A DNA stretch of 64,000 nucleotides from IMGVR_UViG_3300017786_003484:124001-188000; one strand, 5' to 3'. Positions 5,980-60,021 are shown, counted from the first letter of the stretch. Program-made: numbers and translations. Notes: a model not told the origin generated them from the letters alone.

Positions 5980-6015
5980 GCTAACAATGTCACCCAAAAA
6001 CTAATATATACTAAC

Positions 6016-6957
6016 ATGGAATATGGATTAGACAACAAACAAGAATTTTATGTTGATTATACATCTTGTACTAGACCAGTAGGTAACATGCGAGATGAAA
6101 TGGAAATTGCATGTACTAACTTAGCAGAAGATGCACAAAGTAGAAATACTTCTGTACTCATCAGCCTTAGTAGTGGATTAGATAGTCAGGTATTGTTGCA
6201 CACATTTCATTCTTTAGGACTGCCATTTAGTACAGCCTTCTGCCATTGGCCAGGTTATAATGATAACGAACGTAGTAATATAGATATACTAGATAACAAG
6301 TATAATAATAAAACTACTATTATTGAAATTAATCCAGATGATCATAAAGAAGAAGTTGAAAAACTAGCAATCAGTACTGGAATTCCAGCAGAACATCATT
6401 TAATGAAAATGTTTTTAAAGCAACTACCAAATGAATTAGATATATTACAAGGTATTGAGAGTTTTGATTTTATATTCCGTAATAAAAAAACATATTGTAT
6501 GGAAAGTTGGACTGCAATAGAAATAGCAAGTCAAAGAGCATTACAAGAAGTTGACCGAGAAGGTAAGATAGTATCAATTGACAGACGTTCTAATTTTAAC
6601 GAGTTTACACTAGCATTGTTAAGTGATTCAATAGTTGAAGGCTATTGCAATTCTATTAGGTATATTGCTGGCAATGGATTAATTGAGAAAAAATCAGGAG
6701 AGTCACCTCCTCTAATATTTTCATGGGAATATTATGTCAAACCTTTATTATATGGTTTATATTGGAAAGGTGAATTGGAGTTATTTCCAAAAGATGTTAG
6801 TGCAAATAATATTGCTTGGATAATGAATCCAAGCGACAACAGGCTAAGGCACAATTATAAAAATAAATGCGCCTATGTTGAAAGGAACGAATTAATAAAC
6901 CATCTAAAAGATTTTGGGTCTAATAAGACTCGTAGATGGCATCAGTATAAAGGATAA
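6016..6957 (+). CDS. PP-loop (adenine-nucleotide alpha-hydrolase-like) protein
   Basis: ISLSSGLDSQ. Confidence 0.6.
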   Translation: MEYGLDNKQEFYVDYTSCTRPVGNMRDEMEIACTNLAEDAQSRNTSVLISLSSGLDSQVLLHTFHSLGLPFSTAFCHWPGYNDNERSNIDILDNKYNNKTTIIEINPDDHKEEVEKLAISTGIPAEHHLMKMFLKQLPNELDILQGIESFDFIFRNKKTYCMESWTAIEIASQRALQEVDREGKIVSIDRRSNFNEFTLALLSDSIVEGYCNSIRYIAGNGLIEKKSGESPPLIFSWEYYVKPLLYGLYWKGELELFPKDVSANNIAWIMNPSDNRLRHNYKNKCAYVERNELINHLKDFGSNKTRRWHQYKG

Positions 6958-6961
6958 AAAT

Positions 6962-8272
6962 ATGCCGGCACCACTTATAGATCCAAACGGATCTTTACCA
7001 GAAAAGAATATAATTGTAAATCCTTATATTAATAAGAAGTTAGGATATTATATTGTAGACGGCTTTGAATTTGATTCAAAAATTAGAGCAGGGTTACATT
7101 CTGTTAAAGTAAATAAGCCAGTACAATGGATATTTAACAACAAAGAATTTAGATCGCACGACTGGAGTGTTGAACCTAGTGAAACTTTAGATCAGTTATA
7201 TGATGCAAGAGCTTTTGACCTAAGAGTAAAATATGATTATCTTATTTTAAGTTTTAGTGGAGGAAGCGATTCTTGGAATATTTATAAAGCATTTCAACGA
7301 CAAGGCTTACATATTGACGAGGTAATTGTTAATACAATGTCTAAGGCAAGTAAAGGATTAGTAACAGATACTAGTACTAAAGCATTTAATGCTCCTGAAA
7401 GCGAACATGTAAGAAACACAGTACCTAGGCTTAAAGAAATACAAAAAGAAATGCCTATGACAAAGATTACTGTTACTGATCAAAGTGACTATCTGTTTGA
7501 AAGCCTAGAGGCGGCCGGAGATGCTAGTTGGGTATTAGAGAAACGTGAGGGATTAAATCCTGCAGGTATTACTAGATTCAATTATTTGCATTTTATGGAA
7601 GTAAGAAAGAGATTTGATAAAGATAAAAAGATAGGGCTGATAGTTGGTATTGAAAAGCCTAGAACACTTGTTCACCAAGGACGTTTCTTTGTTAGATTTG
7701 CAGACAGAAGTACCAATATGATTACAGTAGCAGAACATTTAAAAGACTATCCTAATTCAACAGTTGAATTCTTTTACTGGTCTCCAGATTGTGTTCCTTT
7801 GCTTATTAAACAAGCTCATGTTGTTAAGAAATACCTTGAGGCTAATCCTTCTATGCAAGTTCATTTCAATAGTGAAAATTCTACAGGAAAAGTATATAGA
7901 TTATTGCACGAGCCTTTACTTAGAAACTTATTATACAGTACCTGGGATCAACGTTGGTTCCAAGCAGAGAAAGCAGTATTAGATTGGGATAGTGAATTTG
8001 ATCAATGGTTTAGAGTTGGTTATCAAGATACTAAAGCATATCAAGTTTGGATGGAAGGTCTAAAGTATGTAGCAGACAACTTAAAGCCCTTTCTACGTTA
8101 TGTAGAAGATCCTGATAATGATATATGGAATACTAGTGTAATGAATTCTTTTATTGATAGGGGTGATGAATTAGTTGGACAACGTCCGGATGGTTTGGCT
8201 CCGGTCCTTCATAACTACGAAGTTGGTAGAATGAAAGTAACCGGGCCAGGTGTTAATACGTTTATGCGTTAG
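6962..8272 (+). CDS. PP-loop ATPase family protein
   Basis: YDYLILSFSGGSDSWN, GIEKPR, EFFYWSPD; start moved to ATG 6962 after AAGGA. Confidence 0.7.
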   Translation: MPAPLIDPNGSLPEKNIIVNPYINKKLGYYIVDGFEFDSKIRAGLHSVKVNKPVQWIFNNKEFRSHDWSVEPSETLDQLYDARAFDLRVKYDYLILSFSGGSDSWNIYKAFQRQGLHIDEVIVNTMSKASKGLVTDTSTKAFNAPESEHVRNTVPRLKEIQKEMPMTKITVTDQSDYLFESLEAAGDASWVLEKREGLNPAGITRFNYLHFMEVRKRFDKDKKIGLIVGIEKPRTLVHQGRFFVRFADRSTNMITVAEHLKDYPNSTVEFFYWSPDCVPLLIKQAHVVKKYLEANPSMQVHFNSENSTGKVYRLLHEPLLRNLLYSTWDQRWFQAEKAVLDWDSEFDQWFRVGYQDTKAYQVWMEGLKYVADNLKPFLRYVEDPDNDIWNTSVMNSFIDRGDELVGQRPDGLAPVLHNYEVGRMKVTGPGVNTFMR

Positions 8273-9189
8273 TTCTTCTGTAATGGAATATTATTGTCTA
8301 TTAAAAATGCTTTTAATTTAACATTATTACGGAAAGCAAAAAGTTTTGTTTCTAAGTCTGTTCCTGCAATAGGAAACAATCCAATATTTTTAAGTCCTTG
8401 AACAAACTCTTTTCTCTTAAAAACATTGCTAATATCTTCTTTAATACTATCTAAGTTAGGCGACTTCCTTGATGCAATTAATCCAATAGGACTAACAAAC
8501 GGAAACTCTTCCTTGTACACATCTTGCCATGTAGGAATGTCTAATCCTAGATCTTGACTTGACATGATACTTGTAATATTAGCATTTAAATGATTTTTTA
8601 CAGTTGGATAATTTGCAAACATACAATCAATATTTCCTGCAAGTAGATCACTTAATGCAGTAGTTCCTCCTTTGGCATAAGGAATAACCTTACTTTCAAT
8701 TTTTAAGTTTTTAATAAGAACTTCAGTAGCAAGATGCTCACTACTACCATATCCTGCCGCTCCAAAAAGAATTTTGCCTTTGCTGAATTTTTCAAGGTCG
8801 CTAACAGTAAAAAACTTTCTGTCGTTGTTGCAGACTAGTACGTTTGGCATTGTAGCAACAACACCAACTAGTTCAAAGTCTTTAATAGGATCATATGGTA
8901 AATCGTTAAACCTAATTTCGTTAGTAACATAGATTTGTGCCATTGTTGCTGTAATAATAGCATTATTGGTTTTTAACATATGTTTGATTGCAATTTTGCC
9001 TGCGGCACCTGGCCTGTTTACAACATTATATTTGTTATCAGAATTAATAACATTTTTTTCAATTAGTCTTGTAGTCTGATCACTTGGGCCTCCGGGTCCG
9101 TGATGTACTGTAAATTCAATATCTGCGGCTGAGGCAGTCGAAACAGCAAATGCCATAATTGCGGCACTAGTTAAAATATTTTTAATCAT
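8269..9189 (-). CDS. Tripartite tricarboxylate transporter substrate-binding protein (TctC/Bug family)
   Basis: Signal peptide, PGGPSD, NRPGAAG, IPYAKGG..ALSDLLAG. Confidence 0.85.
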   Translation of the reverse strand: MIKNILTSAAIMAFAVSTASAADIEFTVHHGPGGPSDQTTRLIEKNVINSDNKYNVVNRPGAAGKIAIKHMLKTNNAIITATMAQIYVTNEIRFNDLPYDPIKDFELVGVVATMPNVLVCNNDRKFFTVSDLEKFSKGKILFGAAGYGSSEHLATEVLIKNLKIESKVIPYAKGGTTALSDLLAGNIDCMFANYPTVKNHLNANITSIMSSQDLGLDIPTWQDVYKEEFPFVSPIGLIASRKSPNLDSIKEDISNVFKRKEFVQGLKNIGLFPIAGTDLETKLFAFRNNVKLKAFLIDNNIPLQKN

Positions 9190-9208
9190 GTATCTTTCTT
9201 CTCTTTTA

Positions 9209-9239: not shown

Positions 9240-9285
9240 ATATTATAAATTAACCATTGGTGTTTACCAAGAAAGTGAGATATGA

Positions 9286-10207: not shown

Positions 10208-10855
10208 ATAGCCTTTTTTGTCTAAACGTTCTACAAGTTCTATCCATGAAATTTGTGGTTCAAGTTCAACAGTAATATTAACTCTATGTTCTTGTATATC
10301 ATCAAGATCTAACTTATGAGCCTTATCAACATGGTTCCAACAAGGTCCAGGATCTTGTTCAACATGTACTGGTTCGCCCCAGTCCCCATCTCCTGCCAAG
10401 TAACTGAAACCTCGTTCCATTCTTTGTGTTTTACTATTCCATTGCTCAAATTTTCTTTCTAGCATTTTAGGATCTTCTACGCCAGTTTTCCACCAACTTA
10501 TTTTAGCACCAACAATTCCTTGTATTGGTACGTTTAGCCTAGCAATCATAGGTATATCAAATTTATGTGCGTCACAATGTGGTTTTGCGGCATGAGCACC
10601 TTTATAACCAATAAACAAACAAAATCTTCTAAAGCCTAATTCTAATTCTTCTACATGATCTTTCATACGTTTACCAATAGGACTGTTATCAAATATAGCC
10701 TGATCTAAATTTGCTTTATCAAATTTTGCTCCGTACTTTTCATATAATTTATCTAGTGCTACCTGTGCATGTGGCATTAAGTCAGTTTTAGCCCATTCCA
10801 ACTCTTCTTTAGTTGGTTCTAAGTGTGGCATTGGTATATGATAATCTAAGTTCAT
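10199..10855 (-). CDS. Putative 2OG-Fe(II)/DSBH-fold oxygenase
   Basis: PHCD...RLNVP...AHKL...RVNITV. Confidence 0.6.
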   Translation of the reverse strand: MNLDYHIPMPHLEPTKEELEWAKTDLMPHAQVALDKLYEKYGAKFDKANLDQAIFDNSPIGKRMKDHVEELELGFRRFCLFIGYKGAHAAKPHCDAHKFDIPMIARLNVPIQGIVGAKISWWKTGVEDPKMLERKFEQWNSKTQRMERGFSYLAGDGDWGEPVHVEQDPGPCWNHVDKAHKLDLDDIQEHRVNITVELEPQISWIELVERLDKKGYLV

Positions 10856-11610
10856 TTAATATTGTTTCCATATTTTTCAATACTACGGTCTAATAGTTCT
10901 TCGTAACCTTTCCATTCCCAACTAAGACTAATACTACACAGAATTTTACTATAGAAACTACCATCTTCTTTTTGTAGTTTATGAGCTCCATGACACCATG
11001 TATCATTGTTGTAAACAAAGGCACTACTTTCTAAACCTCTTGTTTCAACATAACAAGCTCTTTCTGTATCAAATGGAATTCTTTCTGCTCCAATACCTTG
11101 TGATCCTTCGCCTAATGGCTGTAACCAAAATGTTGGTGTAGGATTTTCGTCTTGTATCATAATTCTGAGACTATTTGGATAAGGTAACTGCTCGTTTTTA
11201 TCTTTGTGTATTCCAATAGGTCGTTGGTTACTCCAAAATAATATTTGACTTATTCCGTTTGTTGGAATGTTTGTATGAAGGTAATCAATAAACTTAGGTA
11301 GTATATTTTTACCATCTATCATTGGTTTTGTCCAACGGTCATCTGCTCCTGGGCTATCAATAATATTAATGCCATTCCAATTTGGCATTGTATATTCATT
11401 TAGTTTTCCTGTCAGTTTATGCATACGTTCTGCTTCGTAAGGACTATCAGTATATCTTTCATCTGGTTTTAGTCTAACGATAGGAGCATTATGAGTATTC
11501 CACATTTCCTGAAATGCATCATCCATAACAACAGGAGGAATGTCTAAAACCACAAATGGAATTCCTTTATATTTCTCCGCAAAGTGTCTTGGATAGTTAC
11601 TGTTTCTCAT
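10852..11610 (-). CDS. Putative 2OG-Fe(II)/DSBH-fold oxygenase, paralog of 56061
   Basis: IHKD..PNSLRIMIQDENPTPTF...CHGA; probable start MRNSNY, 5 nt after TATAAATA. Confidence 0.6.
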   Translation of the reverse strand: MRNSNYPRHFAEKYKGIPFVVLDIPPVVMDDAFQEMWNTHNAPIVRLKPDERYTDSPYEAERMHKLTGKLNEYTMPNWNGINIIDSPGADDRWTKPMIDGKNILPKFIDYLHTNIPTNGISQILFWSNQRPIGIHKDKNEQLPYPNSLRIMIQDENPTPTFWLQPLGEGSQGIGAERIPFDTERACYVETRGLESSAFVYNNDTWCHGAHKLQKEDGSFYSKILCSISLSWEWKGYEELLDRSIEKYGNNIK

Positions 11611-11615
11611 ACTAC

Positions 11616-11623
11616 TATTTATA
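11616..11623 (-). promoter_or_regulatory. T4-late-type promoter motif TATAAATA
   Basis: TATAAATA-GTAGT-ATG on the minus strand. Confidence 0.55.
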
Positions 11624-11880: not shown

Positions 11881-11922
11881 TAGTACGCCTTTAACTCAAT
11901 ATAAAACTATTTTAAATATTAG

Positions 11923-12081
11923 ATGAAAAACATAATCTCATTCGTAGGTGTCTTTCATATTTGTGTTTTCCTATTTTTCTATACATTTTTATGGGTAGAA
12001 TATCCTCCCTTAATGTATATGATGTTAATATGGGCAATTCCTGCTTGGCTACTTTTATTATATATTTCTATTACTAAATAA
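11923..12081 (+). CDS. 52-aa membrane protein (not in the ORF track)
   Basis: MKNIISFVGVFHICVFLFF...WLLLLYISITK, 2 TM; preceded by TTTAAATA-TTAG. Confidence 0.5.
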   Translation: MKNIISFVGVFHICVFLFFYTFLWVEYPPLMYMMLIWAIPAWLLLLYISITK

Positions 12082-12512: not shown

Positions 12513-12513
12513 T

Positions 12514-15599: not shown

Positions 15600-16259
15600 A
15601 TGTCTGAGAAAAGAATACTAACATTTGAAGAGACAGAGCGAGATCAAAAATTACACGTTGACTGGGTTTTAGAAAAAACAAATTTTAAAAGAAATGGCTT
15701 CTTTGTTGAAATGGGTGCAGTTGATGGCATCAGACTGAGTAATACATTAACATTAGAACGAGATTATAATTGGTCAGGAATCTTAGCAGAGCCTGATCCA
15801 AGACATCACGAAAGCCTAAAAAACAATAGACCTGGTAGTAGTATTGAGTTTGATTGTGTTTGGGCAAACTCTGGAAAAACAAAAACATTCTTTCAATCTA
15901 AAAAAATTACAGATCAACGCAGTACACTTTCAGATTTTGCAGAAGAAGGCGATGCAAAAGAAATTCGAAAAAAATGGCCTACATTTGATGTTAAAACTAT
16001 AAGCCTATTAGATATGCTTGATAAGCATAATGCACCAAAGTATATAGACTATCTTAGCCTTGACACTGAAGGTAGTGAATATCAAATTCTTAGAACTTTT
16101 GATTTTAGCAAATACAAGTTTGGATTGATTACAGTAGAGTGGAATCATCATAAAAGAAGAGGACAACGTATCTGCGATCTTCTAACATCTAATGGTTATT
16201 ACATACCTGAAGACTCGAAAGACATATTTGAATTTGACTATGCATTTGTTAATAAATAG
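15600..16259 (+). CDS. FkbM-family methyltransferase
   Basis: FFVEMGAVDG..SNT, GILAEP, IDYLSLDTEGSE. Confidence 0.9.
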   Translation: MSEKRILTFEETERDQKLHVDWVLEKTNFKRNGFFVEMGAVDGIRLSNTLTLERDYNWSGILAEPDPRHHESLKNNRPGSSIEFDCVWANSGKTKTFFQSKKITDQRSTLSDFAEEGDAKEIRKKWPTFDVKTISLLDMLDKHNAPKYIDYLSLDTEGSEYQILRTFDFSKYKFGLITVEWNHHKRRGQRICDLLTSNGYYIPEDSKDIFEFDYAFVNK

Positions 16260-16263
16260 TGGT

Positions 16264-16626
16264 ATGGAAGCCGTTTTTCTTTTCTTATTAATATTCAAAC
16301 ATGCCATAGTAGACGTTGGACTACAAAGACACTTGGGTGTACAAAAGAAACACCAATGGCTTAGCCCTAAAGCCCAAATACATTATCTAAGTCACGGTGC
16401 TGGTACTTTTATAGTATTAGTGACACTTGATCCTGCTCTAGCATTAATTGCTGGATTATGTGATTGGATTGCACATTGGCATATTGACTTTACAAAAACT
16501 AACATTAACAACAAATACGAACTAAACAATGCAGATTATGCTTATTGGTGGCTCCTTACTATTGATCAATTATTGCATTACACAACATATTTTCTTATAA
16601 TATATTTTATATTTTTGAATCTTTAA
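16264..16626 (+). CDS. DUF3307-like membrane protein
   Basis: KH..VD..LQ, HWHID..K, IDQLLH; start after AATAAATA-GTGGT. Confidence 0.7.
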   Translation: MEAVFLFLLIFKHAIVDVGLQRHLGVQKKHQWLSPKAQIHYLSHGAGTFIVLVTLDPALALIAGLCDWIAHWHIDFTKTNINNKYELNNADYAYWWLLTIDQLLHYTTYFLIIYFIFLNL

Positions 16627-19019: not shown

Positions 19020-19692
19020 GAATTTTTAGGTTGGCCCATGGTTGTTGAAATCTTATTGATAAAAGCAATCGTGGGCTTTTACCATCCCAATTAATAGAAT
19101 GTAAGATATCAGTTCTAACAAAAGAAGATTCTTGATTTAACTTGGCTAAAGTATTGCATTTGAAATCCGGATCTCCTAATAATTTATATTGTCCAGCTCT
19201 ACTTTTTTCAGCACCACCTTTGGCTTGTAAACGTTTAGCAGGAACACCATTAGGTCTTGGAAATTCAGCAACACGAACCTTCCAATGATCTCTATCACAA
19301 TTCCACCAAAACATCTCTTGGTCTTCGTCGCCATTTAATAAAACATTAAAGCGAACTGGTATATCATATTTGTCTCCGGTATATCTATCAGGACCAGTAG
19401 TATCAATATGTGGATTACCACGAGGATCTTCTAAAGGTTCGTTAAGTGACTTATAAATGAAGAAATTTACCTCTCCATCTTCTAGTCCATATGTTTTTGT
19501 AAAGGCATTAATTTCAGCATATGCTTTTGACTCTTTCCAAGCCTGTATCATATCAGGTTCCGGTGTTATTAATGCCGCTGAAAGAGGAGCATTATCTTGG
19601 TAGTCTTGAACCATTGGTTTGGTTATTTCCTGAGCCCACGACCAGGCTTCAGGTGAAAGTTTAAAAGAAACGGTTAAATAAGGTTGCTCCAT
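19012..19692 (-). CDS. Putative 2OG-Fe(II)/DSBH-fold oxygenase
   Basis: PHID...RFNV...VRTDILHSI...RLLLSIRF; start MEQPY, 5 nt after CATAAATA. Confidence 0.6.
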   Translation of the reverse strand: MEQPYLTVSFKLSPEAWSWAQEITKPMVQDYQDNAPLSAALITPEPDMIQAWKESKAYAEINAFTKTYGLEDGEVNFFIYKSLNEPLEDPRGNPHIDTTGPDRYTGDKYDIPVRFNVLLNGDEDQEMFWWNCDRDHWKVRVAEFPRPNGVPAKRLQAKGGAEKSRAGQYKLLGDPDFKCNTLAKLNQESSFVRTDILHSINWDGKSPRLLLSIRFQQPWANLKIPS

Positions 19693-19704
19693 ACCAATAT
19701 TTAT

Positions 19705-19735
19705 GGTTGACATTATAGATAATATACCATATAAT
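19705..19735 (+). promoter_or_regulatory. Consensus sigma70 promoter for tRNA-Gly
   Basis: GG-TTGACA-17 nt-TATAAT. Confidence 0.85.
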
Positions 19736-34761: not shown

Positions 34762-34796
34762 GCTATCCATTCTTAAAAGTTTCAAGTAAGTAGTGT

Positions 34797-35093
34797 ATGC
34801 AAGAAAATATAGAAGAAGCATTAAAACAAGTATACGATCCAGAGATAAGCATCAACGTTTTTGATCTGGGACTTATCTATGATATTGATATCTCAAAAAT
34901 TCCACATGTAAATATTTTAATGACATTAACAAGTGCATTCTGTCCTTATGCAGATCAGTTAATTGAAGATGTTGAGCAAGCAGTATCTTCAGTTGAAGGT
35001 GTTGACACTTGTAAGGTTGAAGTTACCTTTGACCCGCCATTTGGTCCAGATAAAATGACAGAAGAAGTTAGAATGGTATTAGGTATTTTTTAA
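34797..35093 (+). CDS. DUF59/SufT-like Fe-S cluster assembly factor
   Basis: LKQVYDPEI..NVFDLGLIY, MTLTSAFCP, FDPP. Confidence 0.9.
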   Translation: MQENIEEALKQVYDPEISINVFDLGLIYDIDISKIPHVNILMTLTSAFCPYADQLIEDVEQAVSSVEGVDTCKVEVTFDPPFGPDKMTEEVRMVLGIF

Positions 35094-43250: not shown

Positions 43251-43252
43251 AC

Positions 43253-43414
43253 ATGAATACCCGACCAACACTATATACATGTGAATGCGGACGCATTTTT
43301 GGAGCAGAGCTGAGTGGAGATATAGGAGTTGATCCTGATTTTCTTCCAAAGTTTAAATGTGATGATTGCTCAAAAAAACAAAAAGAGGAGAGTGTTGATG
43401 TTCATATGGCATGA
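43253..43414 (+). CDS. 53-aa Zn-ribbon-like microprotein (not in the ORF track)
   Basis: AAGGAG SD; MNTRPTLYTCECG...KCDDCSKK. Confidence 0.6.
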   Translation: MNTRPTLYTCECGRIFGAELSGDIGVDPDFLPKFKCDDCSKKQKEESVDVHMA

Positions 43415-44054
43415 TTTTGTTATAGTAGGAGATAGTTTTTGTATGTCTAGAAAAGCAAAAACAGACTGGCCGCAGTTAGTTTTATCAGGTCTTACTGGTG
43501 AGCCATTTGAGGATAATAAACCAGTTAGAGGTAGAGGTGTTGCAGGAGGGTCCTGGTGGAAAGCAAGAAGAATACTAAACCAAGAAGCATTTAGTAATGG
43601 TAGACCCAGAGTAATTATATTTTGTCATTCAGACTCCGCTAGAATTAACCATGATGGAAATGAACCATATAATGCCGCTACTATGGATTCTTATCCAGAA
43701 GTCAAGAGTTATTATGATCATATGTTTTCTCCTGATTTTCATAAATGGGCAAAGATTGCTTATTTTAGAGAATTAAATGCAAGATGGGACACTTCCTTAT
43801 GTTTACACTTTCATTGTTTTGACGAATTTCTAGATGACGAAGTACAACTTAACGGATTAGTTTATAAAAAGTCACTAACTAGTTTAGTTGGAGAAGATAG
43901 GTTAAAGGTAAAAGAATCTGGAATATCAAACCATATGACAAAGGACCAACAGAAAACATTTGCTGACAACATTATTAAAATGATAACTGAAAATAAAGTT
44001 GACAATACTATAGATATTATTAATGGAAATAGTAACGATGATCCGATGGACTAG
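43398..44054 (+). CDS. SGNH/GDSL-like protein
   Basis: VGDSF, RGVAGGS, SNH; GAGGAG SD. Confidence 0.65.
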   Translation: MFIWHDFVIVGDSFCMSRKAKTDWPQLVLSGLTGEPFEDNKPVRGRGVAGGSWWKARRILNQEAFSNGRPRVIIFCHSDSARINHDGNEPYNAATMDSYPEVKSYYDHMFSPDFHKWAKIAYFRELNARWDTSLCLHFHCFDEFLDDEVQLNGLVYKKSLTSLVGEDRLKVKESGISNHMTKDQQKTFADNIIKMITENKVDNTIDIINGNSNDDPMD

Positions 44055-44166
44055 AAATAGATTATTTGTTCAGTATTTTATCAACTTATGGACTAAGTTT
44101 AAAAGAAAACGCCGAATGGCACAAAATATCAAAGAAGCAAAAAAACGAGACCCGTTTATATACTAA
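44038..44166 (+). CDS. Small basic protein ending in KRDPFIY, coupled to the carbamoyltransferase (not in the ORF track)
   Basis: MIRWTRNRLF...KEAKKRDPFIY; TAATG overlap; alternative start at 44023. Confidence 0.65.
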   Translation: MIRWTRNRLFVQYFINLWTKFKRKRRMAQNIKEAKKRDPFIY

Positions 44167-45647: not shown

Positions 45648-46483
45648 TGATAATAAGAAAAAGAAGCAAAGTTAACACACCTGATAAGACTATTCTAATA
45701 TTAGGAGATAGTTTTGCTTTTGGTCACGGATGCTCTGATAGGTCTTATTGGGTTGATGAAGATGGAAACGAACATGGCAAAAAGTTTGATTTTAGATACC
45801 CAAGTGAATATTGCTATGCTTCTCTAATTGCAAAAGACAATCCAACTTGGAGAGTAATTAATAAAGGCAAACCTGGTTTAGATAGTTTATCTATGTTTCA
45901 GGACGTATTAAAATGTAGGAAAGAAATAGGACATATTGACTATATTTTGGTTTCTTTGAGTTTTGACGATCGTATATTAGTTAGGAATCCTCATTTAGAG
46001 GAAGATAAAAGCAAGTTTCTTTCTTGGCCAAGATTTGGCTTTTCACCTAAAAACGAAAAAGATCATATTTTTGGTTATCCAGAACCTATGGTGTTTAGAC
46101 TAGCGAGTAGTGATAACGAAATTCCAACAATAGAACAAGAACATCACGAAGCACTAAAGGCATATAGAAATGAACTGTTTAATCCAAGAGTTACAAACCT
46201 TGCTTCTTTAAGTTTAGTTCATGCTTTTTATTCAATTTGTATTACTAATGATACACAATATAATTGGTCAGCTCCACCTAATTCATCACTTTCAAAGACC
46301 GATATGTATGATCATATATCAGACACAATCAGAAACAGCCAGGTCCCTGGAATTCTTACACATTTAAATTATAACAATACACCACCTTTCTCAAAATACA
46401 GGGCGCCAGATGGTCATGCAAATGACTTAGGACATAGTAAGTACTACGAAGATGTTCTAAAGCCAATTATGGACCGTTTATAA
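45647..46483 (+). CDS. SGNH/GDSL-like protein
   Basis: LGDSFAFGHG, N.G.PG, DGHAN..GH. Confidence 0.75.
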   Translation: MIIRKRSKVNTPDKTILILGDSFAFGHGCSDRSYWVDEDGNEHGKKFDFRYPSEYCYASLIAKDNPTWRVINKGKPGLDSLSMFQDVLKCRKEIGHIDYILVSLSFDDRILVRNPHLEEDKSKFLSWPRFGFSPKNEKDHIFGYPEPMVFRLASSDNEIPTIEQEHHEALKAYRNELFNPRVTNLASLSLVHAFYSICITNDTQYNWSAPPNSSLSKTDMYDHISDTIRNSQVPGILTHLNYNNTPPFSKYRAPDGHANDLGHSKYYEDVLKPIMDRL

Positions 46484-46521
46484 TAAATAATGTTACGTTT
46501 TAACGAAAGGTAACATTAGTA

Positions 46522-54112: not shown

Positions 54113-54409
54113 ATGGCTTACCAAAAGAAAATGAGACGCGGAAATAAAGAGACTATTGGAAACGGAATTTATGTTGCTGTCAAAGATGGCAATGTAGAAA
54201 AAGCAATTAAACGTTTTAAGAAGAAAGTACAAGAGTCTGGTATTCTAGATGAGTATCGTGCAAAGAAAGAATATGTTAAACCAAGTACAGTAAAAAGGCT
54301 TGCTAAGAATGCCGCAAAAAGGCGTGCTACAAAGCAAAGACTAAAAGATGAAGCTGAGGGTTTAAACGGTTATAATCCAAATACGCCACGTAAAGGCAAA
54401 AAACGGTAA
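54113..54409 (+). CDS. rpsU: Ribosomal protein bS21 with terminal extensions
   Basis: V.V.DGNVEKAIKRFKKK..ESGIL.E.R....YVKPS. Confidence 0.9.
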   Translation: MAYQKKMRRGNKETIGNGIYVAVKDGNVEKAIKRFKKKVQESGILDEYRAKKEYVKPSTVKRLAKNAAKRRATKQRLKDEAEGLNGYNPNTPRKGKKR

Positions 54410-54427
54410 AATAAACCTAAAAAACCA

Positions 54428-54457
54428 CTTGACTTTTAGGTTGAGAATAACTATATT
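54428..54457 (+). promoter_or_regulatory. hsp20 promoter (sigma70- or sigma32-like)
   Basis: CTTGACT-17 nt-TATATT. Confidence 0.55.
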
Positions 54458-54463
54458 ATAGTA

Positions 54464-54555
54464 GTAGGCATTGCTCATGAGAGAATGCTACATTACTCGA
54501 GAAAGTCCATTATGGATTTCTCATTACAATCTTGCTTAATAAAGGAGATAAAATT
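54464..54555 (+). ncRNA. ROSE-like RNA thermometer in the hsp20 5' UTR
   Basis: Three hairpins; in the last, ATCTTGCTT pairs with AAGGAGAT with a bulged G (UUGCU motif). Confidence 0.7.
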
Positions 54556-55002
54556 ATGACAAGAATTACTACACTAGACCTACCATTTTTATTTAAAAGC
54601 GGTATCGGTTTCGACAGAGTTTTTAACCAAATGGAAACTCAATTTGCAAATAGCAAAACCCAAAATTACCCACCATATAATATTATTAGGAATAGTAACG
54701 AAAACTACCTAATCGAAATTGCGGCCGCTGGTTTCCTAAAACCGGATATTGCAATTACTATGGAAAACGGTACATTAACTGTAAATGGTCAACAGACTAA
54801 AGAAGATACTGATGGCGAAGACGAAGCCAATGGTATTGAATATTTGCACAGGGGACTTTCAAGACGTAACTTTGTATTGACATTTAACTTAGCAGAATAT
54901 GTAGAAGTTAAAAGTGCTGATATGAATAACGGAATCTTGAGTATTCACTTAGAGAAAAAGATCCCAGAAGCAATGAAGCCTCAAGTTATTTCTATTAAAT
55001 AA
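54556..55002 (+). CDS. Small heat-shock protein (Hsp20/IbpA family)
   Basis: IGFD, YPPYNI, IEIA.AGF, YLHRGLS.RNF, A.M.NGIL.I.L. Confidence 0.95.
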   Translation: MTRITTLDLPFLFKSGIGFDRVFNQMETQFANSKTQNYPPYNIIRNSNENYLIEIAAAGFLKPDIAITMENGTLTVNGQQTKEDTDGEDEANGIEYLHRGLSRRNFVLTFNLAEYVEVKSADMNNGILSIHLEKKIPEAMKPQVISIK

Positions 55003-55020
55003 CTTAAATGCATAACATGA

Positions 55021-55049
55021 AGAGGGAGGATAACACCTCCCTCTTTTTC
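55021..55049 (+). terminator. Intrinsic terminator
   Basis: AGAGGGAGG-ATAACA-CCTCCCTCT-TTTT. Confidence 0.85.
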
Positions 55050-55051
55050 TT

Positions 55052-55059
55052 TATAAATA
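55052..55059 (+). promoter_or_regulatory. TATAAATA late-type promoter motif
   Basis: Directly after the terminator, upstream of clpS. Confidence 0.5.
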
Positions 55060-55089
55060 TCATTGTAGCAAATGAGAAAGGTTACCTAA

Positions 55090-55407
55090 ATGAATACAAC
55101 AGACACCGCACTTGAAGTAGTAAAGGAAGTTACAGAAGAAGTTTTTTTAAAGGAGCCAGATAGATTTAGAGTGGTTATCTTAAATGATAATACAACTCCA
55201 ATGGAATTTGTTATTGAGCTTTTAGGAGTTATTTTCCATCATTCAAATGAAACGGCTACGGCTATTATGATGCAAATACATGAAAAGGGAAAAGGAACTG
55301 CTGGTGTCTACACGTTTGAAATTGCAGAACAGAAAGCACAAGAAAGTACACAGATTGCAAGAACTAACGGTCACACCCTAGGAGTTACTGTTGAGCTTGA
55401 CAGTTAA
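55090..55407 (+). CDS. clpS: Clp adaptor (N-degron recognin)
   Basis: VVILNDNTTPMEFV..LL..IF, M.IH.KG.G.AG.Y.FEIAE.K. Confidence 0.93.
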   Translation: MNTTDTALEVVKEVTEEVFLKEPDRFRVVILNDNTTPMEFVIELLGVIFHHSNETATAIMMQIHEKGKGTAGVYTFEIAEQKAQESTQIARTNGHTLGVTVELDS

Positions 55408-56056
55408 AAATGTTAAACACTCAAAGATAATTTCATCTAACAATCCAAATCCAGTTTTATTTGTTGATGTAGATGACACCTGCCTAGAGTTACTTGGTGG
55501 CTTAGTAATGTGGCTTAATAAACTAAACCGTTTAAAAGATTATAAGCCCGGAAAAATAATCAAAGATAGAAGCAACCTACATGATTGGTTAAACATACCA
55601 GAGCCCTTAATGAACACATGGAAACATGAGTTCACTACATACTCATGGGAATGGGGAGCATTAAACGGTAGAGCAGATGCTTCTGAGGCTTTTAAAGTTT
55701 TTAGATATTATGGTTGGAGAGTAATTGGAGTTGGACACGGCTCTTCGACAGTTGATAGAGCTATCTTAAGACGTGCTAATTTAGAATTAGTATATCCAGG
55801 TGTATTTGAAGATTATTTTATTGCTCCTGGAGATAAAAGTTTTTCTCCATACATGAGAGATTATGAAGATCCAATATGCATTACTTCTGTTGTAAAATAT
55901 GCCAAAGACATGGTTGATGCTGGACACATTACTTTCTTGTTAAAGCAACCGTGGAATAAAGAGCATAAAGATATTCGCATAAAGTCCTTTAATAATTGGA
56001 AACAGATATGCGATAATATTATGGCTAACCATCACAAAATCATCAAAGATAATTAG
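55391..56056 (+). CDS. HAD-family 5'(3')-nucleotidase-like protein
   Basis: FVDVDDT (DxDxT), G...FL..QPWN, NNW..I. Confidence 0.65.
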   Translation: MSLTVKNVKHSKIISSNNPNPVLFVDVDDTCLELLGGLVMWLNKLNRLKDYKPGKIIKDRSNLHDWLNIPEPLMNTWKHEFTTYSWEWGALNGRADASEAFKVFRYYGWRVIGVGHGSSTVDRAILRRANLELVYPGVFEDYFIAPGDKSFSPYMRDYEDPICITSVVKYAKDMVDAGHITFLLKQPWNKEHKDIRIKSFNNWKQICDNIMANHHKIIKDN

Positions 56057-56060
56057 TAGT

Positions 56061-57041
56061 ATGAACAACAACATTCCAAGTTCACTATGGGGACAATATG
56101 ATACAGTAACCTTTAGGTTTAATGGCAATTTGGAATGGCAACCAACTCCTCCAGGATCTAATTGGAATAAACTGCAGGTTGCTAATGTTATGAGTTTTAT
56201 TTCTGGTGATATTCCTTGGAATCATCTAGCAAGAACAAGTAGAAGTACAATAGCAGTTATTGATCCGTCTGTTGATTTAAGGTACCTTCATCATATTCCT
56301 TCACATGTTTGGCAAGGTAGTAATTTTGTAAGTGAAAGATGGACTAAGGTTCCGTACATACCTGTTGATGTTCCTAAGATAGAACCTGATAACTGGGATT
56401 TATTTTGGGAATTATGGGATAAAGAAAAAGATAGAATTAAGAGAGAAGCCAACGAGCCAGACTATTGGCGAGGAGTAATGATATATTTAAATGAGACTAT
56501 AGACCCTTCTAACTTTAATTTTAATACTACTCCAATTTCAGATTGGACTATGCATTTTCCTAAGATGTTTGATGCTATACGAAATGCAGTCCCTTTTAAA
56601 TTTATTGAAAAGATTGTTCTCTGGCAAAATGTAAGAGAAATAGATCCTCATTTTGATCCAGACCATTGGGTACTTCCGTGGCCTGATAGTTTAAGAGTTA
56701 TGTTGCATGACACTAATAAGAAGCCAACATTGTACATGACTAAATGGCCTGAACGTGATGACAACTATAACCCTTCTCCAGTAACATCTATAAAAGGAGG
56801 AGACTTTGGAACTAATGCAAGTAATGTAGACAACAAAGATAAATTTTATGTAGAAGTTCCAGAAGAAACAAACACCTTTCTATTAAATAACGGTGCGTTC
56901 TTACATGGAGCAGATATGGGAACAGAAAAAATTATAATGGCTATCAAAGGAACACCGGATCACTTTACTTGGCTAAAAAGTTTAGAATCTAGTTACAACA
57001 AATATAAAAGGGATGACTATGACAGTTTCTTTAAATCTTAG
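56061..57041 (+). CDS. Putative 2OG-Fe(II)/DSBH oxygenase, paralog of 10852
   Basis: PHFD..WPDSLRVML.D.N..PT...LHGA. Confidence 0.6.
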   Translation: MNNNIPSSLWGQYDTVTFRFNGNLEWQPTPPGSNWNKLQVANVMSFISGDIPWNHLARTSRSTIAVIDPSVDLRYLHHIPSHVWQGSNFVSERWTKVPYIPVDVPKIEPDNWDLFWELWDKEKDRIKREANEPDYWRGVMIYLNETIDPSNFNFNTTPISDWTMHFPKMFDAIRNAVPFKFIEKIVLWQNVREIDPHFDPDHWVLPWPDSLRVMLHDTNKKPTLYMTKWPERDDNYNPSPVTSIKGGDFGTNASNVDNKDKFYVEVPEETNTFLLNNGAFLHGADMGTEKIIMAIKGTPDHFTWLKSLESSYNKYKRDDYDSFFKS

Positions 57042-57951
57042 AAGAAATACAAACGAACATAATGTATCAGGGTCTCTAAATCATAGAGCACCATTTCTAA
57101 AAAATCAGATGAAACCATCTAAAACTTTTAATGATTTAATTAAGTTTGAAATGACTGAAACAGATTGTATTAAGTTAAAAGAAGATACACTAGGTGCGGT
57201 TGAGAAGTTTGGTAATTGGGGATATAGATTAAAAAACTATAAAGATGATGCTGGATATTTAGGAACAGGTTTAACCTATAATCCAAGGCACATTGATAGC
57301 ACAAACGATTTCAAAGAACAAGATATACATCAACAAGTACAAGGAAACTATGACCCTGGTGCAAAAGGTCTTAATGGACAAAATCCTTATAGTAGGCTTA
57401 CTGGCAAAGATTCTGTATTTGCTAAAGTAAATACCCATTATGACACCTTCTCGATGTGTTACCGTACTCCTGCTAGTAAACATGGCTATTTGGGCGACTT
57501 TTGTAATACTTTTAAAAGAAGCATGGTTAGAAGCAGTATAAGGGTTATTAACGCCGCCGCTACGGGTCATAATATGGGTAAAGATATTAATGACAAGAAA
57601 ATGAGAGCAGGAGTAGCATGGCATACAGACGAATCAATTTTTGAGAATTTAAGGATTAATATTCCTGTTGAAACTCATCCTATTTTTGTATTAGAACAAA
57701 AAGGATATCCACCTCAACATTTACAAGCAAATTATGCTTACAGTTGGAACACATCATTATTACATAGAGCATATTGTACAGAGAGAACACAAAGTCCGTT
57801 ATACAGAACACATATTATGTTAGGCTTTTCATGTTGGTGGGATTTTAATGAAACAACAGAAACTTGGACACAAAATGAATTTTTTGGTAAAAAACATCCA
57901 TGGGATATGTTACATGACGGAGAAGTTATACCAGGGTTAAAATTGGTATAA
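57013..57951 (+). CDS. AspH-like oxygenase
   Basis: WHTD..LRINIPV...WNT..LHR...RTHIMLG. Confidence 0.7.
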   Translation: MTMTVSLNLRRNTNEHNVSGSLNHRAPFLKNQMKPSKTFNDLIKFEMTETDCIKLKEDTLGAVEKFGNWGYRLKNYKDDAGYLGTGLTYNPRHIDSTNDFKEQDIHQQVQGNYDPGAKGLNGQNPYSRLTGKDSVFAKVNTHYDTFSMCYRTPASKHGYLGDFCNTFKRSMVRSSIRVINAAATGHNMGKDINDKKMRAGVAWHTDESIFENLRINIPVETHPIFVLEQKGYPPQHLQANYAYSWNTSLLHRAYCTERTQSPLYRTHIMLGFSCWWDFNETTETWTQNEFFGKKHPWDMLHDGEVIPGLKLV

Positions 57952-57981
57952 CAGTTAGTAGAAAGGAAAATATATAGTAGT

Positions 57982-58731
57982 ATGAGTGTATTCAGTAGTC
58001 AAAATCCAAATGCCGTGCAGGGAGTTGGTGCTTCGCATAGTAAGCAAGGAATTAGAGTTAATGATCTAAAATTAGAGAACGTTGCCGCTGAGGTTGCATT
58101 GTCAGCAATAGGCAACTTTGAACCTCTGGACTATAAGTTAGACATTCATGGGATTCATAGTGTTATTAATGAAAAATATGGAAATGATTGGGTTGACTAT
58201 CTTCCTCGTACAGACAGACCTAATAATAGAAAAGCTATGTCTCTAACAACAATACCAGGATGGACGCATCAAAGTCCACCAAGTATACCAGAAGCTATAA
58301 AGCATATGAAAAGAGATGTAAAGGAGTTTGAATTTTCAACTCCAACAGATTTGTATAAAGATTGCGATCGTGCATACCCAGGCAATACAAGTTTGAAATC
58401 ATTCTTAGACGAATGGCAACCCCTAGGACGTACCTTTATTGTTAATGCTGGCATTGGCGGATATTTTGTACCTCATAGAGACCATCCTGGAATGCCTCGA
58501 CCAGCTCTACGCCTAATTGCATTTTTACAAAATTGCGGTCCTATGGATTATGACTGGATGATGGACAACAGAAAGGTTGACATTGAACTTGGAAGAGTGT
58601 ATTATGTTAATACTAGAATGACTCATAGAACTATGAGTTGGGTTAATGACAGTTGGCATCTTATATTGAACGTTCCTTTTAATGCAAGTAATGTTTCAAA
58701 AGTACTAGAAAATTTACAACACCGTCATTAA
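57982..58731 (+). CDS. AspH-like oxygenase
   Basis: GGYFVPHRD...VNTRMTHRT...HLILNV. Confidence 0.7.
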   Translation: MSVFSSQNPNAVQGVGASHSKQGIRVNDLKLENVAAEVALSAIGNFEPLDYKLDIHGIHSVINEKYGNDWVDYLPRTDRPNNRKAMSLTTIPGWTHQSPPSIPEAIKHMKRDVKEFEFSTPTDLYKDCDRAYPGNTSLKSFLDEWQPLGRTFIVNAGIGGYFVPHRDHPGMPRPALRLIAFLQNCGPMDYDWMMDNRKVDIELGRVYYVNTRMTHRTMSWVNDSWHLILNVPFNASNVSKVLENLQHRH

Positions 58732-58750
58732 AATAACATAGGAGAAATAA

Positions 58751-59383
58751 ATGCGATATTATAATATTGATCTTAGTGGCTATGGCGGTGAAGTAGTCTA
58801 CGGAAAACTTACAAAAGAACAACACGATTTTTGGCACGATAAAGAAGAGAGTGATATTACAGCTCATGCTTTTTGGGATCCGTTTGATGAAGGTGATGAA
58901 AACTTAGTTCAAGACGAAGAAGATCCTAGGTGGTTAGGTTATTGGCATGACCTTGATGATATTGTACATCTAAATGGAGGCACAATGTCCGATGCTTGGA
59001 TTACTGTTGAAGAAGTTTCAAGTGCAGACTATGCCGCCTCAAGTATAAAAGAAATTGTTGATAGAGTTGATGTAGCAGAATTTATTAAAACTAATAAGAA
59101 TGAGTTAACACAAGAAGCTATCGACTTAGATGATTATGCAAACGAAGATGGACATAACTATATCTTTTATGGCATGAGTATTGAAAAAGGACAGTTCCAT
59201 TTATCAACTATTGAGCTTCCTGATGATGAAGAATTTGATCTTTCTAAGATTAATTTCTGTGCAACTGAGCTTGATAATGGTGATAACATTGTTGAAGTGT
59301 TGTCGTATGGAGATATTGATTTAGATAACGTAGGCGGTGATTCAACTGGAAAAGGTTATAGTACAACCATATTTGATTACTAA
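58751..59383 (+). CDS. Highly acidic hypothetical protein
   Basis: AGGAG SD; GYGGE, EKG, STGKG motifs. Confidence 0.7.
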   Translation: MRYYNIDLSGYGGEVVYGKLTKEQHDFWHDKEESDITAHAFWDPFDEGDENLVQDEEDPRWLGYWHDLDDIVHLNGGTMSDAWITVEEVSSADYAASSIKEIVDRVDVAEFIKTNKNELTQEAIDLDDYANEDGHNYIFYGMSIEKGQFHLSTIELPDDEEFDLSKINFCATELDNGDNIVEVLSYGDIDLDNVGGDSTGKGYSTTIFDY

Positions 59384-59394
59384 TAAATAACGAT

Positions 59395-60021
59395 ATGAAA
59401 CTTACAGTAGGTCCATCTGATTGTATTAGAGAAATAGAAGTCTTGTTACCAGATGTCTTAGATGTTGGGGTTATGTTAAGTGGAGGTGCTGACTCTGCTA
59501 TACTACTTTACATGTTAATTGAAGAAAGACGAAATACAAATTCACAACATATAATTAGACCTTTTACTGTTGCTCGTCCTGATGGTGCTTGGAATTATGT
59601 TGCTCCTATAGTAGATTGGATTAGAACAAAAACTGATATTCATATTGATGCTCCAATTAAAGTAGGCAATCCAGACTTACATCATAGTAAACAAGGACGT
59701 TCAGGAGCAGATGAAGCCTTTAGTAAATATGGAATTGAGCATATCTTCTATGGTAGTCAAGCACATCCTCCTGTAAAAATGCCAGGTGATTACCCATCAA
59801 GACCTAGTGCAGTTAACCTACCTCATACTACTTGTCCTTTTGCACTTGTTGATAAAAGACATACGTTACATTTATATGATAAACTTCAAGTATGGGATCT
59901 AATTAAACTAACTCATTCATGTACACATAGAACCGAAGGCCGATGCGGAGAGTGTTATAATTGTACAGAACGTTCCTGGGCATTAGAAGAGCTTGGGTTC
60001 GCTGACCCTGGAGAAAAATAA
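59395..60021 (+). CDS. QueC-like PP-loop ATPase with C-terminal Zn motif
   Basis: LSGGADS, PF...DK, THSC......CGECYNC.ER. Confidence 0.75.
   Translation: MKLTVGPSDCIREIEVLLPDVLDVGVMLSGGADSAILLYMLIEERRNTNSQHIIRPFTVARPDGAWNYVAPIVDWIRTKTDIHIDAPIKVGNPDLHHSKQGRSGADEAFSKYGIEHIFYGSQAHPPVKMPGDYPSRPSAVNLPHTTCPFALVDKRHTLHLYDKLQVWDLIKLTHSCTHRTEGRCGECYNCTERSWALEELGFADPGEK

What the first reader, a model, noticed from the sequence alone, without database searches (positions are those of the whole stretch)
6003..59397. TATAAATA-like motif fixed 4-5 nt before ATG: a class of probably leaderless late mRNAs
Seen: TATAAATA-GTAGT-ATG (minus, ATG at 11610), CATAAATA-TTGGT-ATG (minus, 19692), AATAAATA-GTGGT-ATG (16264), AATAAATA-ACGAT-ATG (59395), AATATATA-CTAAC-ATG (6016), AATATATA-GTAGT-ATG (57982), GATAATTA-GTAGT-ATG (56061), and 4-nt variants at 11923 and 34797. 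These starts lack a well-spaced SD, whereas most other genes have AGGAG. Known: T4-type late promoters (TATAAATA) initiate a few nt downstream of the motif. Inference: transcription starts at or next to the A of AUG, so many of the oxygenase and PP-loop genes are late and leaderless. It also corrects several start calls in the ORF track.
Basis: partly seen in the sequence, partly recalled or inferred. Interest (0 to 1): 0.7.

Follow-up and report, generated by a model that had tools for sequence, protein, structure and literature searches.

The report
Late promoters fused to start codons
In this uncultured marine jumbo phage, about 8% of genes have a T4-type late-promoter box (NATAAATA) exactly 5 bases before their ATG and no ribosome-binding site, so their late mRNAs probably begin at the start codon; wild relatives keep this layout, but cultured relatives and T4 do not.

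Summary
In the 244-kb phage genome, ATAAATA is strongly depleted: 41 copies against 96-176 expected. Of these, 36 point toward a nearby gene start and 9 lie exactly 5 nt before an ATG. Among candidate start ATGs, 23 carry a ≥6/7 match at that spacing, against about 5.8 at any other offset (P≈6e-8). None of the 23 has a Shine-Dalgarno (SD) site, 19 have T at -1, and GTG/TTG starts show no enrichment.

The same box lies 14-125 nt upstream of SD-led tail sheath, tube, adaptor and fibre genes. The genome also encodes a gp55-type late sigma factor. The box is therefore a T4-type late promoter, and 5 nt is the T4 distance from box to transcription start.

Four gene families keep box-N5-ATG across diverged environmental relatives while the flanks change:
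- gp25-like baseplate wedge
- PAAR
- a virion protein
- the window gene at 11610

Enterobacterial Rak2-like phages, T4, KVP40 and cyanophages show no such spike.

Low-depth metatranscriptome contigs begin 1 and 3 nt before the ATG at 57982 in two runs. One contig at 59395 does not fit.

Leaderless late mRNAs are the best explanation, but no transcription start has been mapped directly. I class this as a new variant of known kinds.

The parts
11608..11623 (-). TATAAATA-GTAGT-ATG. A perfect T4 late consensus 5 nt before the ATG of a 252-aa gene (10852-11610).
   Evidence: Sequence; no SD. Five orthologues at 49-87% identity keep [G/T/C]ATAA[A/G]TA-N5-ATG and the N-terminus MRNS.YP, while the flanks differ. 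There is no same-strand gene within 400 nt upstream. Atlas lead: Asp/Arg-hydroxylase-like.
16251..16266 (+). AATAAATA-GTGGT-ATG. Start of a 120-aa DUF3307 membrane protein (16264-16626).
   Evidence: PF11750 aligns residues 6-116 to profile positions 2-109, and phrog_2470 aligns from residue 4. The upstream gene ends at 16259, so the longer ORF call from 16192 would overlap it by 68 nt.
19690..19705 (-). CATAAATA-TTGGT-ATG. Start of a 226-aa gene (19012-19692), the first gene of a minus-strand unit.
   Evidence: The divergent gene lies 143 nt away. The orthologue at 88% identity keeps CATAAATA-CTGGT-ATG, and the alternative upstream ATG (19713) is AGT there.
59382..59397 (+). AATAAATA-ACGAT-ATG. 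Start of a 208-aa QueC-like PP-loop gene (59395-60021).
   Evidence: Orthologues at 59-65% identity start at the same Met but lack the box, so the promoter has turned over. One RNA contig from a ~96% identical strain begins at 59384, inside the box; this is ambiguous or contrary evidence.
57969..57984 (+). AATATATA-GTAGT-ATG. A one-mismatch variant at the start of a 249-aa gene (57982-58731).
   Evidence: RNA contigs begin at 57981 (run X15) and 57979 (run X16), with no coverage in the 460 nt upstream. The orthologue at 65% identity has the same N-terminus but no box. Atlas lead: Asp/Arg-hydroxylase-like, score 0.98.
56048..56063 (+). GATAATTA-GTAGT-ATG. A one-mismatch variant at the start of a 326-aa gene (56061-57041).
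   Evidence: No SD. The upstream gene's TAG stop overlaps the end of the box. There is no RNA coverage of its 5' end.
6003..6018 (+). AATATATA-CTAAC-ATG. A one-mismatch variant at the start of a 313-aa gene (6016-6957) that is weakly QueC-like.
   Evidence: No SD. Position -1 is C rather than the usual T, so this is a weaker member.
11911..11925 (+). TTTAAATA-TTAG-ATG. A 4-nt gap before a 52-aa hydrophobic ORF, divergent from the 11610 gene. Weak candidate.
   Evidence: Spacings of 4 and 6 nt occur in a minority of gp25 orthologues and in the relative G001.
34785..34799 (+). AGTAAGTA-GTGT-ATG. A 4-nt gap and a 5/7 match, before a 98-aa Fe-S assembly (PF01883) gene. Weak candidate.
   Evidence: PF01883 aligns from residue 3. 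The ATAAGTA variant recurs at gap 5 elsewhere in the genome and in 11610 orthologues.
55053..55059 (+). ATAAATA late box with a leader. It lies 30 nt before the ATG at 55090, and the predicted TSS is 55065.
   Evidence: RNA contigs of four runs begin at 55076-55097 and none begins upstream of 55065.
46483..46489 (+). ATAAATA late box with a leader, 32 nt before the ATG at 46522.
1416..1422 (+). ATAAATA late box with a leader, 45 nt before the ATG at 1468.

Best explanation
NATAAATA (core TAAATA) is the -10-type box of this phage's late promoters. Host RNA polymerase carrying the phage's gp55-family sigma recognises it. As in T4, transcription should start 6 nt after the box.

The genome has two layouts:
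- For most late structural genes, the box lies 14-125 nt upstream and the mRNA has a short leader with an AGGAG site.
- For about 20 genes (7-9 in the window), the box lies exactly 5 nt before the ATG. The transcript then begins at, or within about 3 nt of, the A of AUG. Ribosomes would have to initiate on the 5'-terminal AUG without an SD site.

What is shown: the motif, its depletion elsewhere, its orientation and position, the sigma gene, the absence of SD, the restriction to ATG, and the conservation of the spacing.

What is inferred: the exact start site and the leaderless mode of translation.
For: Promoter identity:
- ATAAATA is depleted 2.5- to 4-fold.
- 36 of 41 copies point toward a downstream ORF start.
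- It precedes tail sheath, two tail-tube paralogues, head-tail adaptor, fibre and virion protein genes.
- A gp55-like sigma is present.
- There is no conserved -35 region in the logo.
- A predicted ATAAATA late motif was already reported for the related phages CBB and GAP32 (PMC5259590).

Geometry:
- The T4 box occupies -13 to -6 (PMC1524935). The class has the box at -13 to -6 relative to the A of ATG.
- Leadered copies also favour T at box+5 (15/30) and A at box+6 (15/30), the usual -1/+1 preference.

Leaderless signatures:
- 23 starts at gap 5 against 5.8 expected (P = 6e-8); T at -1 in 19 of 23.
- 0 of 23 have an SD.
- ATG is enriched, while GTG/TTG are at chance (3 observed, 2.4 expected).
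- One member lies 15 nt after a strong intrinsic terminator (-20 kcal/mol; genome position 242604, minus strand).

Conservation:
- The gp25-like baseplate gene has TAAATA at gap 5 in 46 of 52 related contigs, gap 4 in 4 and gap 6 in 2. In 51 of the 52 loci there is a single possible ATG, and the flanks have diverged.
- The PAAR gene keeps it in 26 of 50 loci, and a virion protein in 12 of 12.
- The window gene at 11610 keeps it in 5 of 5.
- A 71-kb relative shows the same spike at gaps 4-5.

RNA:
- Contigs of two metatranscriptomes begin at -1 and -3 of the ATG at 57982.
- Contig starts also fit the predicted sigma70-like and leadered late promoters nearby.
Against: - No 5'-end-specific data exist. 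The RNA evidence is a few low-depth assembled contigs at 2-5x.
- Those contigs start 1-3 nt upstream of the A, not at it.
- One contig from a ~96% identical strain starts 11 nt upstream of the ATG at 59395, inside the box.
- A second 6-kb stretch gave no informative ends.
- The boxes at 57982 and 59395 are absent from orthologues at 59-65% identity.
- One gap-5 ATG (genome position 73544) is followed by AGGAG and an out-of-frame real start, so box-N5-ATG is not always a start codon.
- No gp33 or gp45 homologue was found, so activation may differ from T4.
- The host and its capacity for leaderless translation are unknown.
Confidence: 0.7

Rival explanations
1. The box is a late promoter, but initiation occurs a few nt upstream or is heterogeneous. 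The mRNAs would then carry mini-leaders of 1-5 nt instead of starting exactly at the A. Functionally they would still lack an SD.
For: RNA contigs begin at -1 and -3, not +1, at 57982. Spacings of 4, 6 and 8 nt also occur.
Against: The modal spacing of 5 nt equals the T4 distance from box to +1. T at -1 with A at +1 is the usual initiation context. Contig ends at 2-5x depth do not resolve single nucleotides.
Confidence: 0.15
2. TAAATA at -11 to -6 is a translational signal inside polycistronic mRNAs, not a promoter at these sites. It could be an A/U-rich SD-independent ribosome loading or re-initiation element, partly built from upstream TAA stop codons.
For: 7 of 23 sites overlap or abut the upstream gene's stop codon. 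One RNA contig crosses the box at 59395. Upstream genes are often on the same strand.
Against: The identical box lies at variable distances (14-125 nt) before SD-led late structural genes. 16 of 23 sites have no stop within 14 nt. Three sites (11610, 19692 and genome 237314) have no same-strand gene upstream within 400 nt, and another directly follows a terminator. A gp55-type sigma is present. ATAAATA is depleted genome-wide, as expected for a promoter word.
Confidence: 0.1
3. The pattern is a compositional accident of an AT-rich, tightly packed genome, or the ATGs are not the real starts.
For: The genome is 65% A+T. Some single-mismatch variants are individually unremarkable. One gap-5 ATG is not a gene start.
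Against: Other offsets and internal ATGs give 5.8 and about 4 matches, against 23 (P = 6e-8). The exact spacing is conserved across diverged orthologues of four families. Protein similarity and profile alignments start at these Met residues.
Confidence: 0.03

Closest known systems
T4 late promoters (TATAAATA at -13 to -6) read by gp55, with gp33 and the gp45 clamp (PMC2988020, PMC1524935)
   Same: It has the same 8-bp box with a variable first base, no -35 element, and a gp55-family sigma encoded by the phage. The box precedes virion genes. The 5-nt distance from the box to the ATG equals T4's distance from box to +1.
   Different: T4, KVP40 and the cyanophages S-PM2, Syn9 and P-SSM2 show no excess of ATAAATA-N5-ATG. 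Their late mRNAs are generally described as having SD-containing leaders; I did not check this here. The sigma here is 322 aa against 185 aa in T4, because of an N-terminal extension. No gp33 or gp45 homologue was detected.
Predicted ATAAATA late motif of Rak2-like jumbo phages CBB and GAP32 (PMC5259590)
   Same: They are the nearest cultured relatives by sigma (46% identity to 121Q, PBECO4 and A4). They have the same motif before structural genes, and gp33/gp45 were likewise not found.
   Different: In 121Q, RaK2, GAP32 and CBB there is no gap-5 spike. The gp25 orthologue there has a classical AAGGAG-type SD and no box. Leaderless starts are not mentioned in that paper.
Leaderless genes of bacteria and archaea with a -10 box at a fixed distance from the start codon (for example mycobacteria, PMC4633059, and the GeneMarkS-2 leaderless model, PMC6028130); lambda cI from PRM (from my own knowledge)
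   Same: A -10-type element lies at a fixed distance from the start codon, there is no SD, and the start is strongly restricted to AUG.
   Different: Here the promoter belongs to a phage late sigma, and the class includes virion parts of a lytic jumbo phage. It coexists with a majority of SD-led genes in the same genome.
Variant late boxes in other T4-like phages: NATAAATA in S-PM2 (PMC2984593) and CTAAATA in Aeh1 (PMC1524935)
   Same: Positions -13 and -12 are degenerate. This clade also uses GCTAAATA, GGTAAATA and GTTAAATA.
   Different: No fusion of the box to the start codon was noted in the passages I read for those phages.

Membership tests
T4-type (gp55-dependent) late promoter | 8-bp TATA-like box NATAAATA | tested here: met
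   The logo of 23 sites has T, A, A, A, T, A nearly invariant at -11 to -6 and A in 16 of 23 at -12. The exact ATAAATA word is depleted elsewhere in the genome.
T4-type (gp55-dependent) late promoter | A gp55-family sigma encoded by the phage | tested here: met
   The T4 gp55 query hits G000 33819-34091 at E = 4.8e-6. The ORF matches phrog_12791 'sigma factor for late transcription' at E = 8.5e-85 and phrog_234 at E = 5e-25.
T4-type (gp55-dependent) late promoter | Located in front of late (virion) genes | tested here: met
   It precedes tail sheath, tube, adaptor, fibre and virion proteins, and gp25-like wedge, PAAR and virion proteins.
T4-type (gp55-dependent) late promoter | No conserved -35 element | tested here: met
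   Positions -25 to -14 show no conservation. Upstream flanks of orthologues diverge freely.
T4-type (gp55-dependent) late promoter | Transcription starts 6 nt after the box | tested here: inconclusive
   RNA contig starts fall at box+3 and box+5 for the 57982 site. For the leadered box at 55053 they fall at or beyond box+17. Depth is only 2-5x.
T4-type (gp55-dependent) late promoter | Activation through gp33 co-activator and gp45 sliding clamp | tested here: not met
   No match to T4 gp33 or to PF02916, the gp45 family. The record is only ~74% complete, and these are sequence searches only. The same absence was reported for CBB.
Leaderless mRNA | 5' end of the mRNA at, or within a few nt of, the A of AUG | tested here: inconclusive
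   Two runs give contig starts at -1 and -3 of the ATG at 57982. One contig starts at -11 of the ATG at 59395. No 5'-end-specific data exist.
Leaderless mRNA | No Shine-Dalgarno sequence | tested here: met
   0 of 23 starts have a >=4-nt SD core, against 182 of 302 genes overall. There is no room for one between the box and the ATG.
Leaderless mRNA | AUG (not GUG/UUG) start | tested here: met
   ATG: 23 observed against 5.8 expected. GTG plus TTG: 3 observed against 2.4 expected.
Leaderless mRNA | Promoter -10 element at a fixed distance from the start codon, kept in evolution | tested here: met
   Gap 5 is kept in 46 of 52 gp25 orthologues, 26 of 50 PAAR orthologues, 12 of 12 orthologues of a virion protein, and 5 of 5 orthologues of the 11610 gene.

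The most novel reading that the evidence does not exclude
Fusing the gp55-type late promoter to the start codon may be a clade-wide expression strategy of abundant, uncultured aquatic jumbo phages related to the Rak2-like group. It is ancient enough to be conserved at the gp25 baseplate gene across sigma identities of about 50%. It may set low, SD-independent translation for low-copy virion parts (gp25-like wedge, PAAR tip) and accessory enzymes, while high-copy parts (sheath, tube) keep SD leaders. Alternatively, it may keep late translation running when SD-dependent or S1-dependent initiation is compromised late in infection. That would be a previously undescribed link between phage late transcription and leaderless translation.
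Probability: 0.3. Interest if true: 0.7.

Novelty: new variant of a known kind. Interest (0 to 1): 0.55.

Why it matters
- **Annotation.** Gene callers that expect an SD site misplace these starts. Three calls in this window are corrected, and the rule can be applied to hundreds of related metagenomic contigs.
- **Regulation.** The motif yields a late-promoter map for an uncultured phage that is common in seawater. At least 14 DNA runs hold ≥98% of the sampled words, and the phage is seen in metatranscriptomes.
- **Mechanism.** If confirmed, a phage late sigma would produce a dedicated class of leaderless mRNAs. That makes two questions testable: how leaderless translation is used for dosage or timing in a lytic cycle, and what this says about the unknown host's translation apparatus.
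- **Evolution.** Enterobacterial relatives are SD-led at the same gp25 gene. This gives a natural comparison for how such a switch evolves.

Tried and rejected
- **DNA similarity.** Megablast of 4.3 kb of the window against cultured phages found nothing. Relatives were reached only at protein level.
- **Sigma search by Pfam.** Sigma70_r2 (PF04542) found no sigma. T4 gp55 itself has no significant Pfam family, so the T4 protein and PHROGs were used instead.
- **Second read-laying.** The call on the structural region (G000 86.4-92.4 kb) gave only sparse contigs. None had an end near the three candidate ATGs, and one spanned the gap-4 site. This was uninformative.
- **Orthologues without the box.** Orthologues of the 57982 and 59395 genes lack the box. 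I read this as promoter turnover, not as refutation, because four other families conserve it.
- **Stop-codon overlap** as the source of the motif was rejected: only 7 of 23 sites have a stop within 14 nt.
- **Terminators upstream of the class.** A search found only one clear case, at genome position 242604 on the minus strand.
- **Gene functions.** Pfam and PHROGs gave no function for most window members. Atlas look-alikes are leads only.
- **Literature.** Five full-text searches, three of them using the term 'leaderless', found no description of gp55-type leaderless late mRNAs. The library is incomplete, so this is not proof of absence.

Full report
**Context.** The window is bases 124001-188000 of a single 244,432-bp IMG/VR virus record. 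The record has about 35% G+C and CheckV rates it about 74% complete. It has no close DNA match among cultured phages. Its late sigma is most similar (46% identity) to that of the Rak2-like jumbo phages 121Q, PBECO4 and A4. The sequence is near-identical in many seawater metagenomes and is partly covered in six metatranscriptomes.

All nine quoted sequences are at the stated places. I called 302 genes with a codon-usage model and tested the spacing in ways that do not depend on the choice of start.
- ATAAATA occurs only 41 times on both strands. Markov models predict 96-119 and base composition predicts 176. It is the second rarest A/T 7-mer, after ATATATA.
- 36 of the 41 copies point toward a nearby downstream ORF.
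- The distance from the box to the next ATG has a sharp spike at 5 nt: 9 of 41, against about 0.8 expected.
- Among 757 candidate start ATGs, 23 have a ≥6/7 match at gap 5. The mean over 30 other offsets is 5.8 and the maximum is 10 (P = 5.6e-8). Internal in-frame ATGs show no spike.
- None of the 23 has an SD core, whereas 182 of 302 genes do.
- Position -1 was not used for selection, yet it is T in 19 of 23 (P = 9e-7).
- GTG and TTG codons are not enriched at this spacing: 3 observed against 2.4 expected.
- Only 7 of 23 sites have an upstream stop codon within 14 nt. Three sites have no same-strand gene upstream within 400 nt. One lies 15 nt after a -20 kcal/mol terminator.

**What the motif is.** The same ATAAATA box lies 14-125 nt upstream of SD-led genes for a head-decoration or fibre protein, a tail fibre, the head-tail adaptor, the tail sheath, two tail-tube paralogues and virion proteins.
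- The genome encodes a gp55-family late sigma at 33330-34298 (T4 gp55 match E = 4.8e-6; phrog_12791 E = 8.5e-85).
- There is no conserved -35 region.
- An ATAAATA late motif was already predicted for the related phages CBB and GAP32 (PMC5259590).

The box is therefore a T4-type late promoter.

**Why leaderless.** In T4 the box occupies -13 to -6 relative to the transcription start (PMC1524935). In the gap-5 class it occupies -13 to -6 relative to the A of ATG, so +1 falls on the A. Leadered copies of the box also prefer T at box+5 and A at box+6 (15/30 each), which is the usual -1/+1 context. With 5 nt between box and ATG there is no room for an SD site, and none is present.

**Evolutionary test.** I fetched 80 contigs that encode a related sigma, at 49-71% identity, about 1.07 Mb in all. 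More than 500 such contigs exist.
- The gap-5 spike recurs in all identity groups.
- Many instances belong to one orthologous gene, a gp25-like baseplate wedge subunit (phrog_43; the profile aligns from residue 6).
- Of 52 orthologues, 46 have TAAATA exactly 5 nt before the ATG, 4 have it at 4 nt and 2 at 6 nt. In 51 of the 52 loci this ATG is the only possible one. The flanks and the 5-nt spacer have diverged.
- The same holds for a PAAR protein (26 of 50 loci, across several unrelated flanks) and a virion protein (12 of 12, down to 59% identity).
- It also holds for the window gene at 11610 (5 of 5, down to 49% identity, with an ATAAGTA variant).
- A 71-kb relative shows enrichment at gaps 4 and 5 across its whole length.

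**Contrast with cultured phages.**
- 121Q, RaK2, GAP32 and CBB show no spike.
- They carry a classical AAGGAG-type SD and no box before their gp25 orthologue.
- T4, KVP40, S-PM2, Syn9 and P-SSM2 show no spike either.

**RNA evidence.** Only assembled, low-depth metatranscriptome contigs were available.
- On window 54001-60000, contigs of two runs begin at 57981 and 57979 (the ATG is at 57982). Neither run has coverage in the 460 nt upstream.
- Contig starts also fit the other predicted promoters nearby. A sigma70-like TTGACT-17-TATATT lies at 54429-54457, and the contigs downstream of it start at 54474-54535. The leadered late box at 55053-55059 has a predicted start at 55065, and the contigs downstream start at 55076-55097.
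- Against the model, a contig from a ~96% identical strain begins at 59384. That is 11 nt before the ATG at 59395 and inside the box. It may be read-through from the expressed upstream gene.
- A second stretch was uninformative.
- Taken together, the RNA data are compatible with 5' UTRs of 0-3 nt at one site but do not prove the model.

**Sub-claims.** The three start corrections hold.
- 11610 replaces TTG 11715.
- 16264 replaces 16192.
- 19692 replaces 19713.
- The support comes from orthologue N-termini, non-conserved upstream starts and profile alignments.

The functional labels are weaker.
- The genes at 59395 and, weakly, 6016 are QueC-like.
- The genes at 11610 and 57982 have only language-model leads to Asp/Arg-hydroxylase-like cupins.
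- The genes at 19692 and 56061 are unassigned.
- The one-mismatch variants and the two 4-nt variants are weaker members of the class.

**Comparison and novelty.** gp55-type late promoters are known. So are leaderless genes with a fixed -10 box, for example in mycobacteria, in the GeneMarkS-2 leaderless model, and in lambda cI. The new element is their combination: a conserved class in which a phage late promoter is fused to the start codon. This class is present throughout a large environmental clade and absent from its cultured relatives and from the canonical T4-like phages. I found no description of it in the searchable literature. No gp33 or gp45 homologue was detected, and the sigma has an N-terminal extension, so activation may differ from T4. 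I rate it a new variant of a known kind, with about 0.7 confidence in the leaderless reading and moderate interest.

Noticed in passing
window 54429-54457 (+), gene 54556-55002: A near-consensus sigma70-type promoter (TTGACT, 17 nt, TATATT) precedes a phage-encoded HSP20 small heat-shock protein (PF00011, E = 6e-14). This gene has the highest RNA contig depth in the stretch, and its contigs start at 54474-54535.
   Followed up: partly
window 35093-45647 and 60021-61595 (+): A run of five to seven similar-sized genes includes at least four radical-SAM enzymes (36733-43250). A carbamoyltransferase follows (44166-45647) and a small Fe-S assembly protein precedes (34797-35093). Further on lie a B12-binding radical-SAM gene (60021-61595) and QueC-like PP-loop genes. 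Together they look like a large auxiliary biosynthetic or modification island of unknown product.
   Followed up: partly
G000 33330-34298 (L002:1012-1980): The gp55-like late sigma is 322 aa against 185 aa in T4. The T4-like part aligns to residues ~161-307, so there is a ~150-aa N-terminal extension shared with Rak2-like phages (phrog_12791). No gp33 or gp45 homologue was found in the 244-kb record.
   Followed up: partly
G000 242604-242660 (minus strand; L012): A strong intrinsic terminator (cccggtctagtgccggg plus a T-run, -20 kcal/mol) ends 15 nt before an ATG. GTTAAATA-TTACT fills the gap. Termination and re-initiation are packed into about 30 nt.
   Followed up: no
G000 73532-73562 (L006): In AATAAATA-AGAGT-ATG-AGGAGATAT..ATG, the gap-5 ATG is out of frame with the real, SD-led start 16 nt downstream (a virion protein gene). 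The predicted transcript would begin with an AUG that is not the gene's start.
   Followed up: no
whole genome G000: ATATATA (34 copies) and ATAAATA (41 copies) are the two rarest A/T-only 7-mers, against a median of 142. The depletion of ATATATA may mean it also acts as a late box, as at 6003 and 57969, or it may only reflect general TA avoidance.
   Followed up: no
window 54001-60000; runs X1-X20: The phage is near-identical (>=98% of sampled words) in at least 14 seawater or marine DNA runs from 2018-2025, and it is transcribed in several marine and estuary metatranscriptomes. It is an abundant, widespread and uncultured jumbo phage, and its host is unknown.
   Followed up: no
L145-L157, L176-L183 (PAAR orthologues): Some lineages of the same clade have replaced the box-N5-ATG arrangement before the PAAR gene. 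One group has an AGGA SD and another has a shifted TTAAAT-CCATA-ATG. These show gains and losses of the leaderless layout within one gene family.
   Followed up: partly
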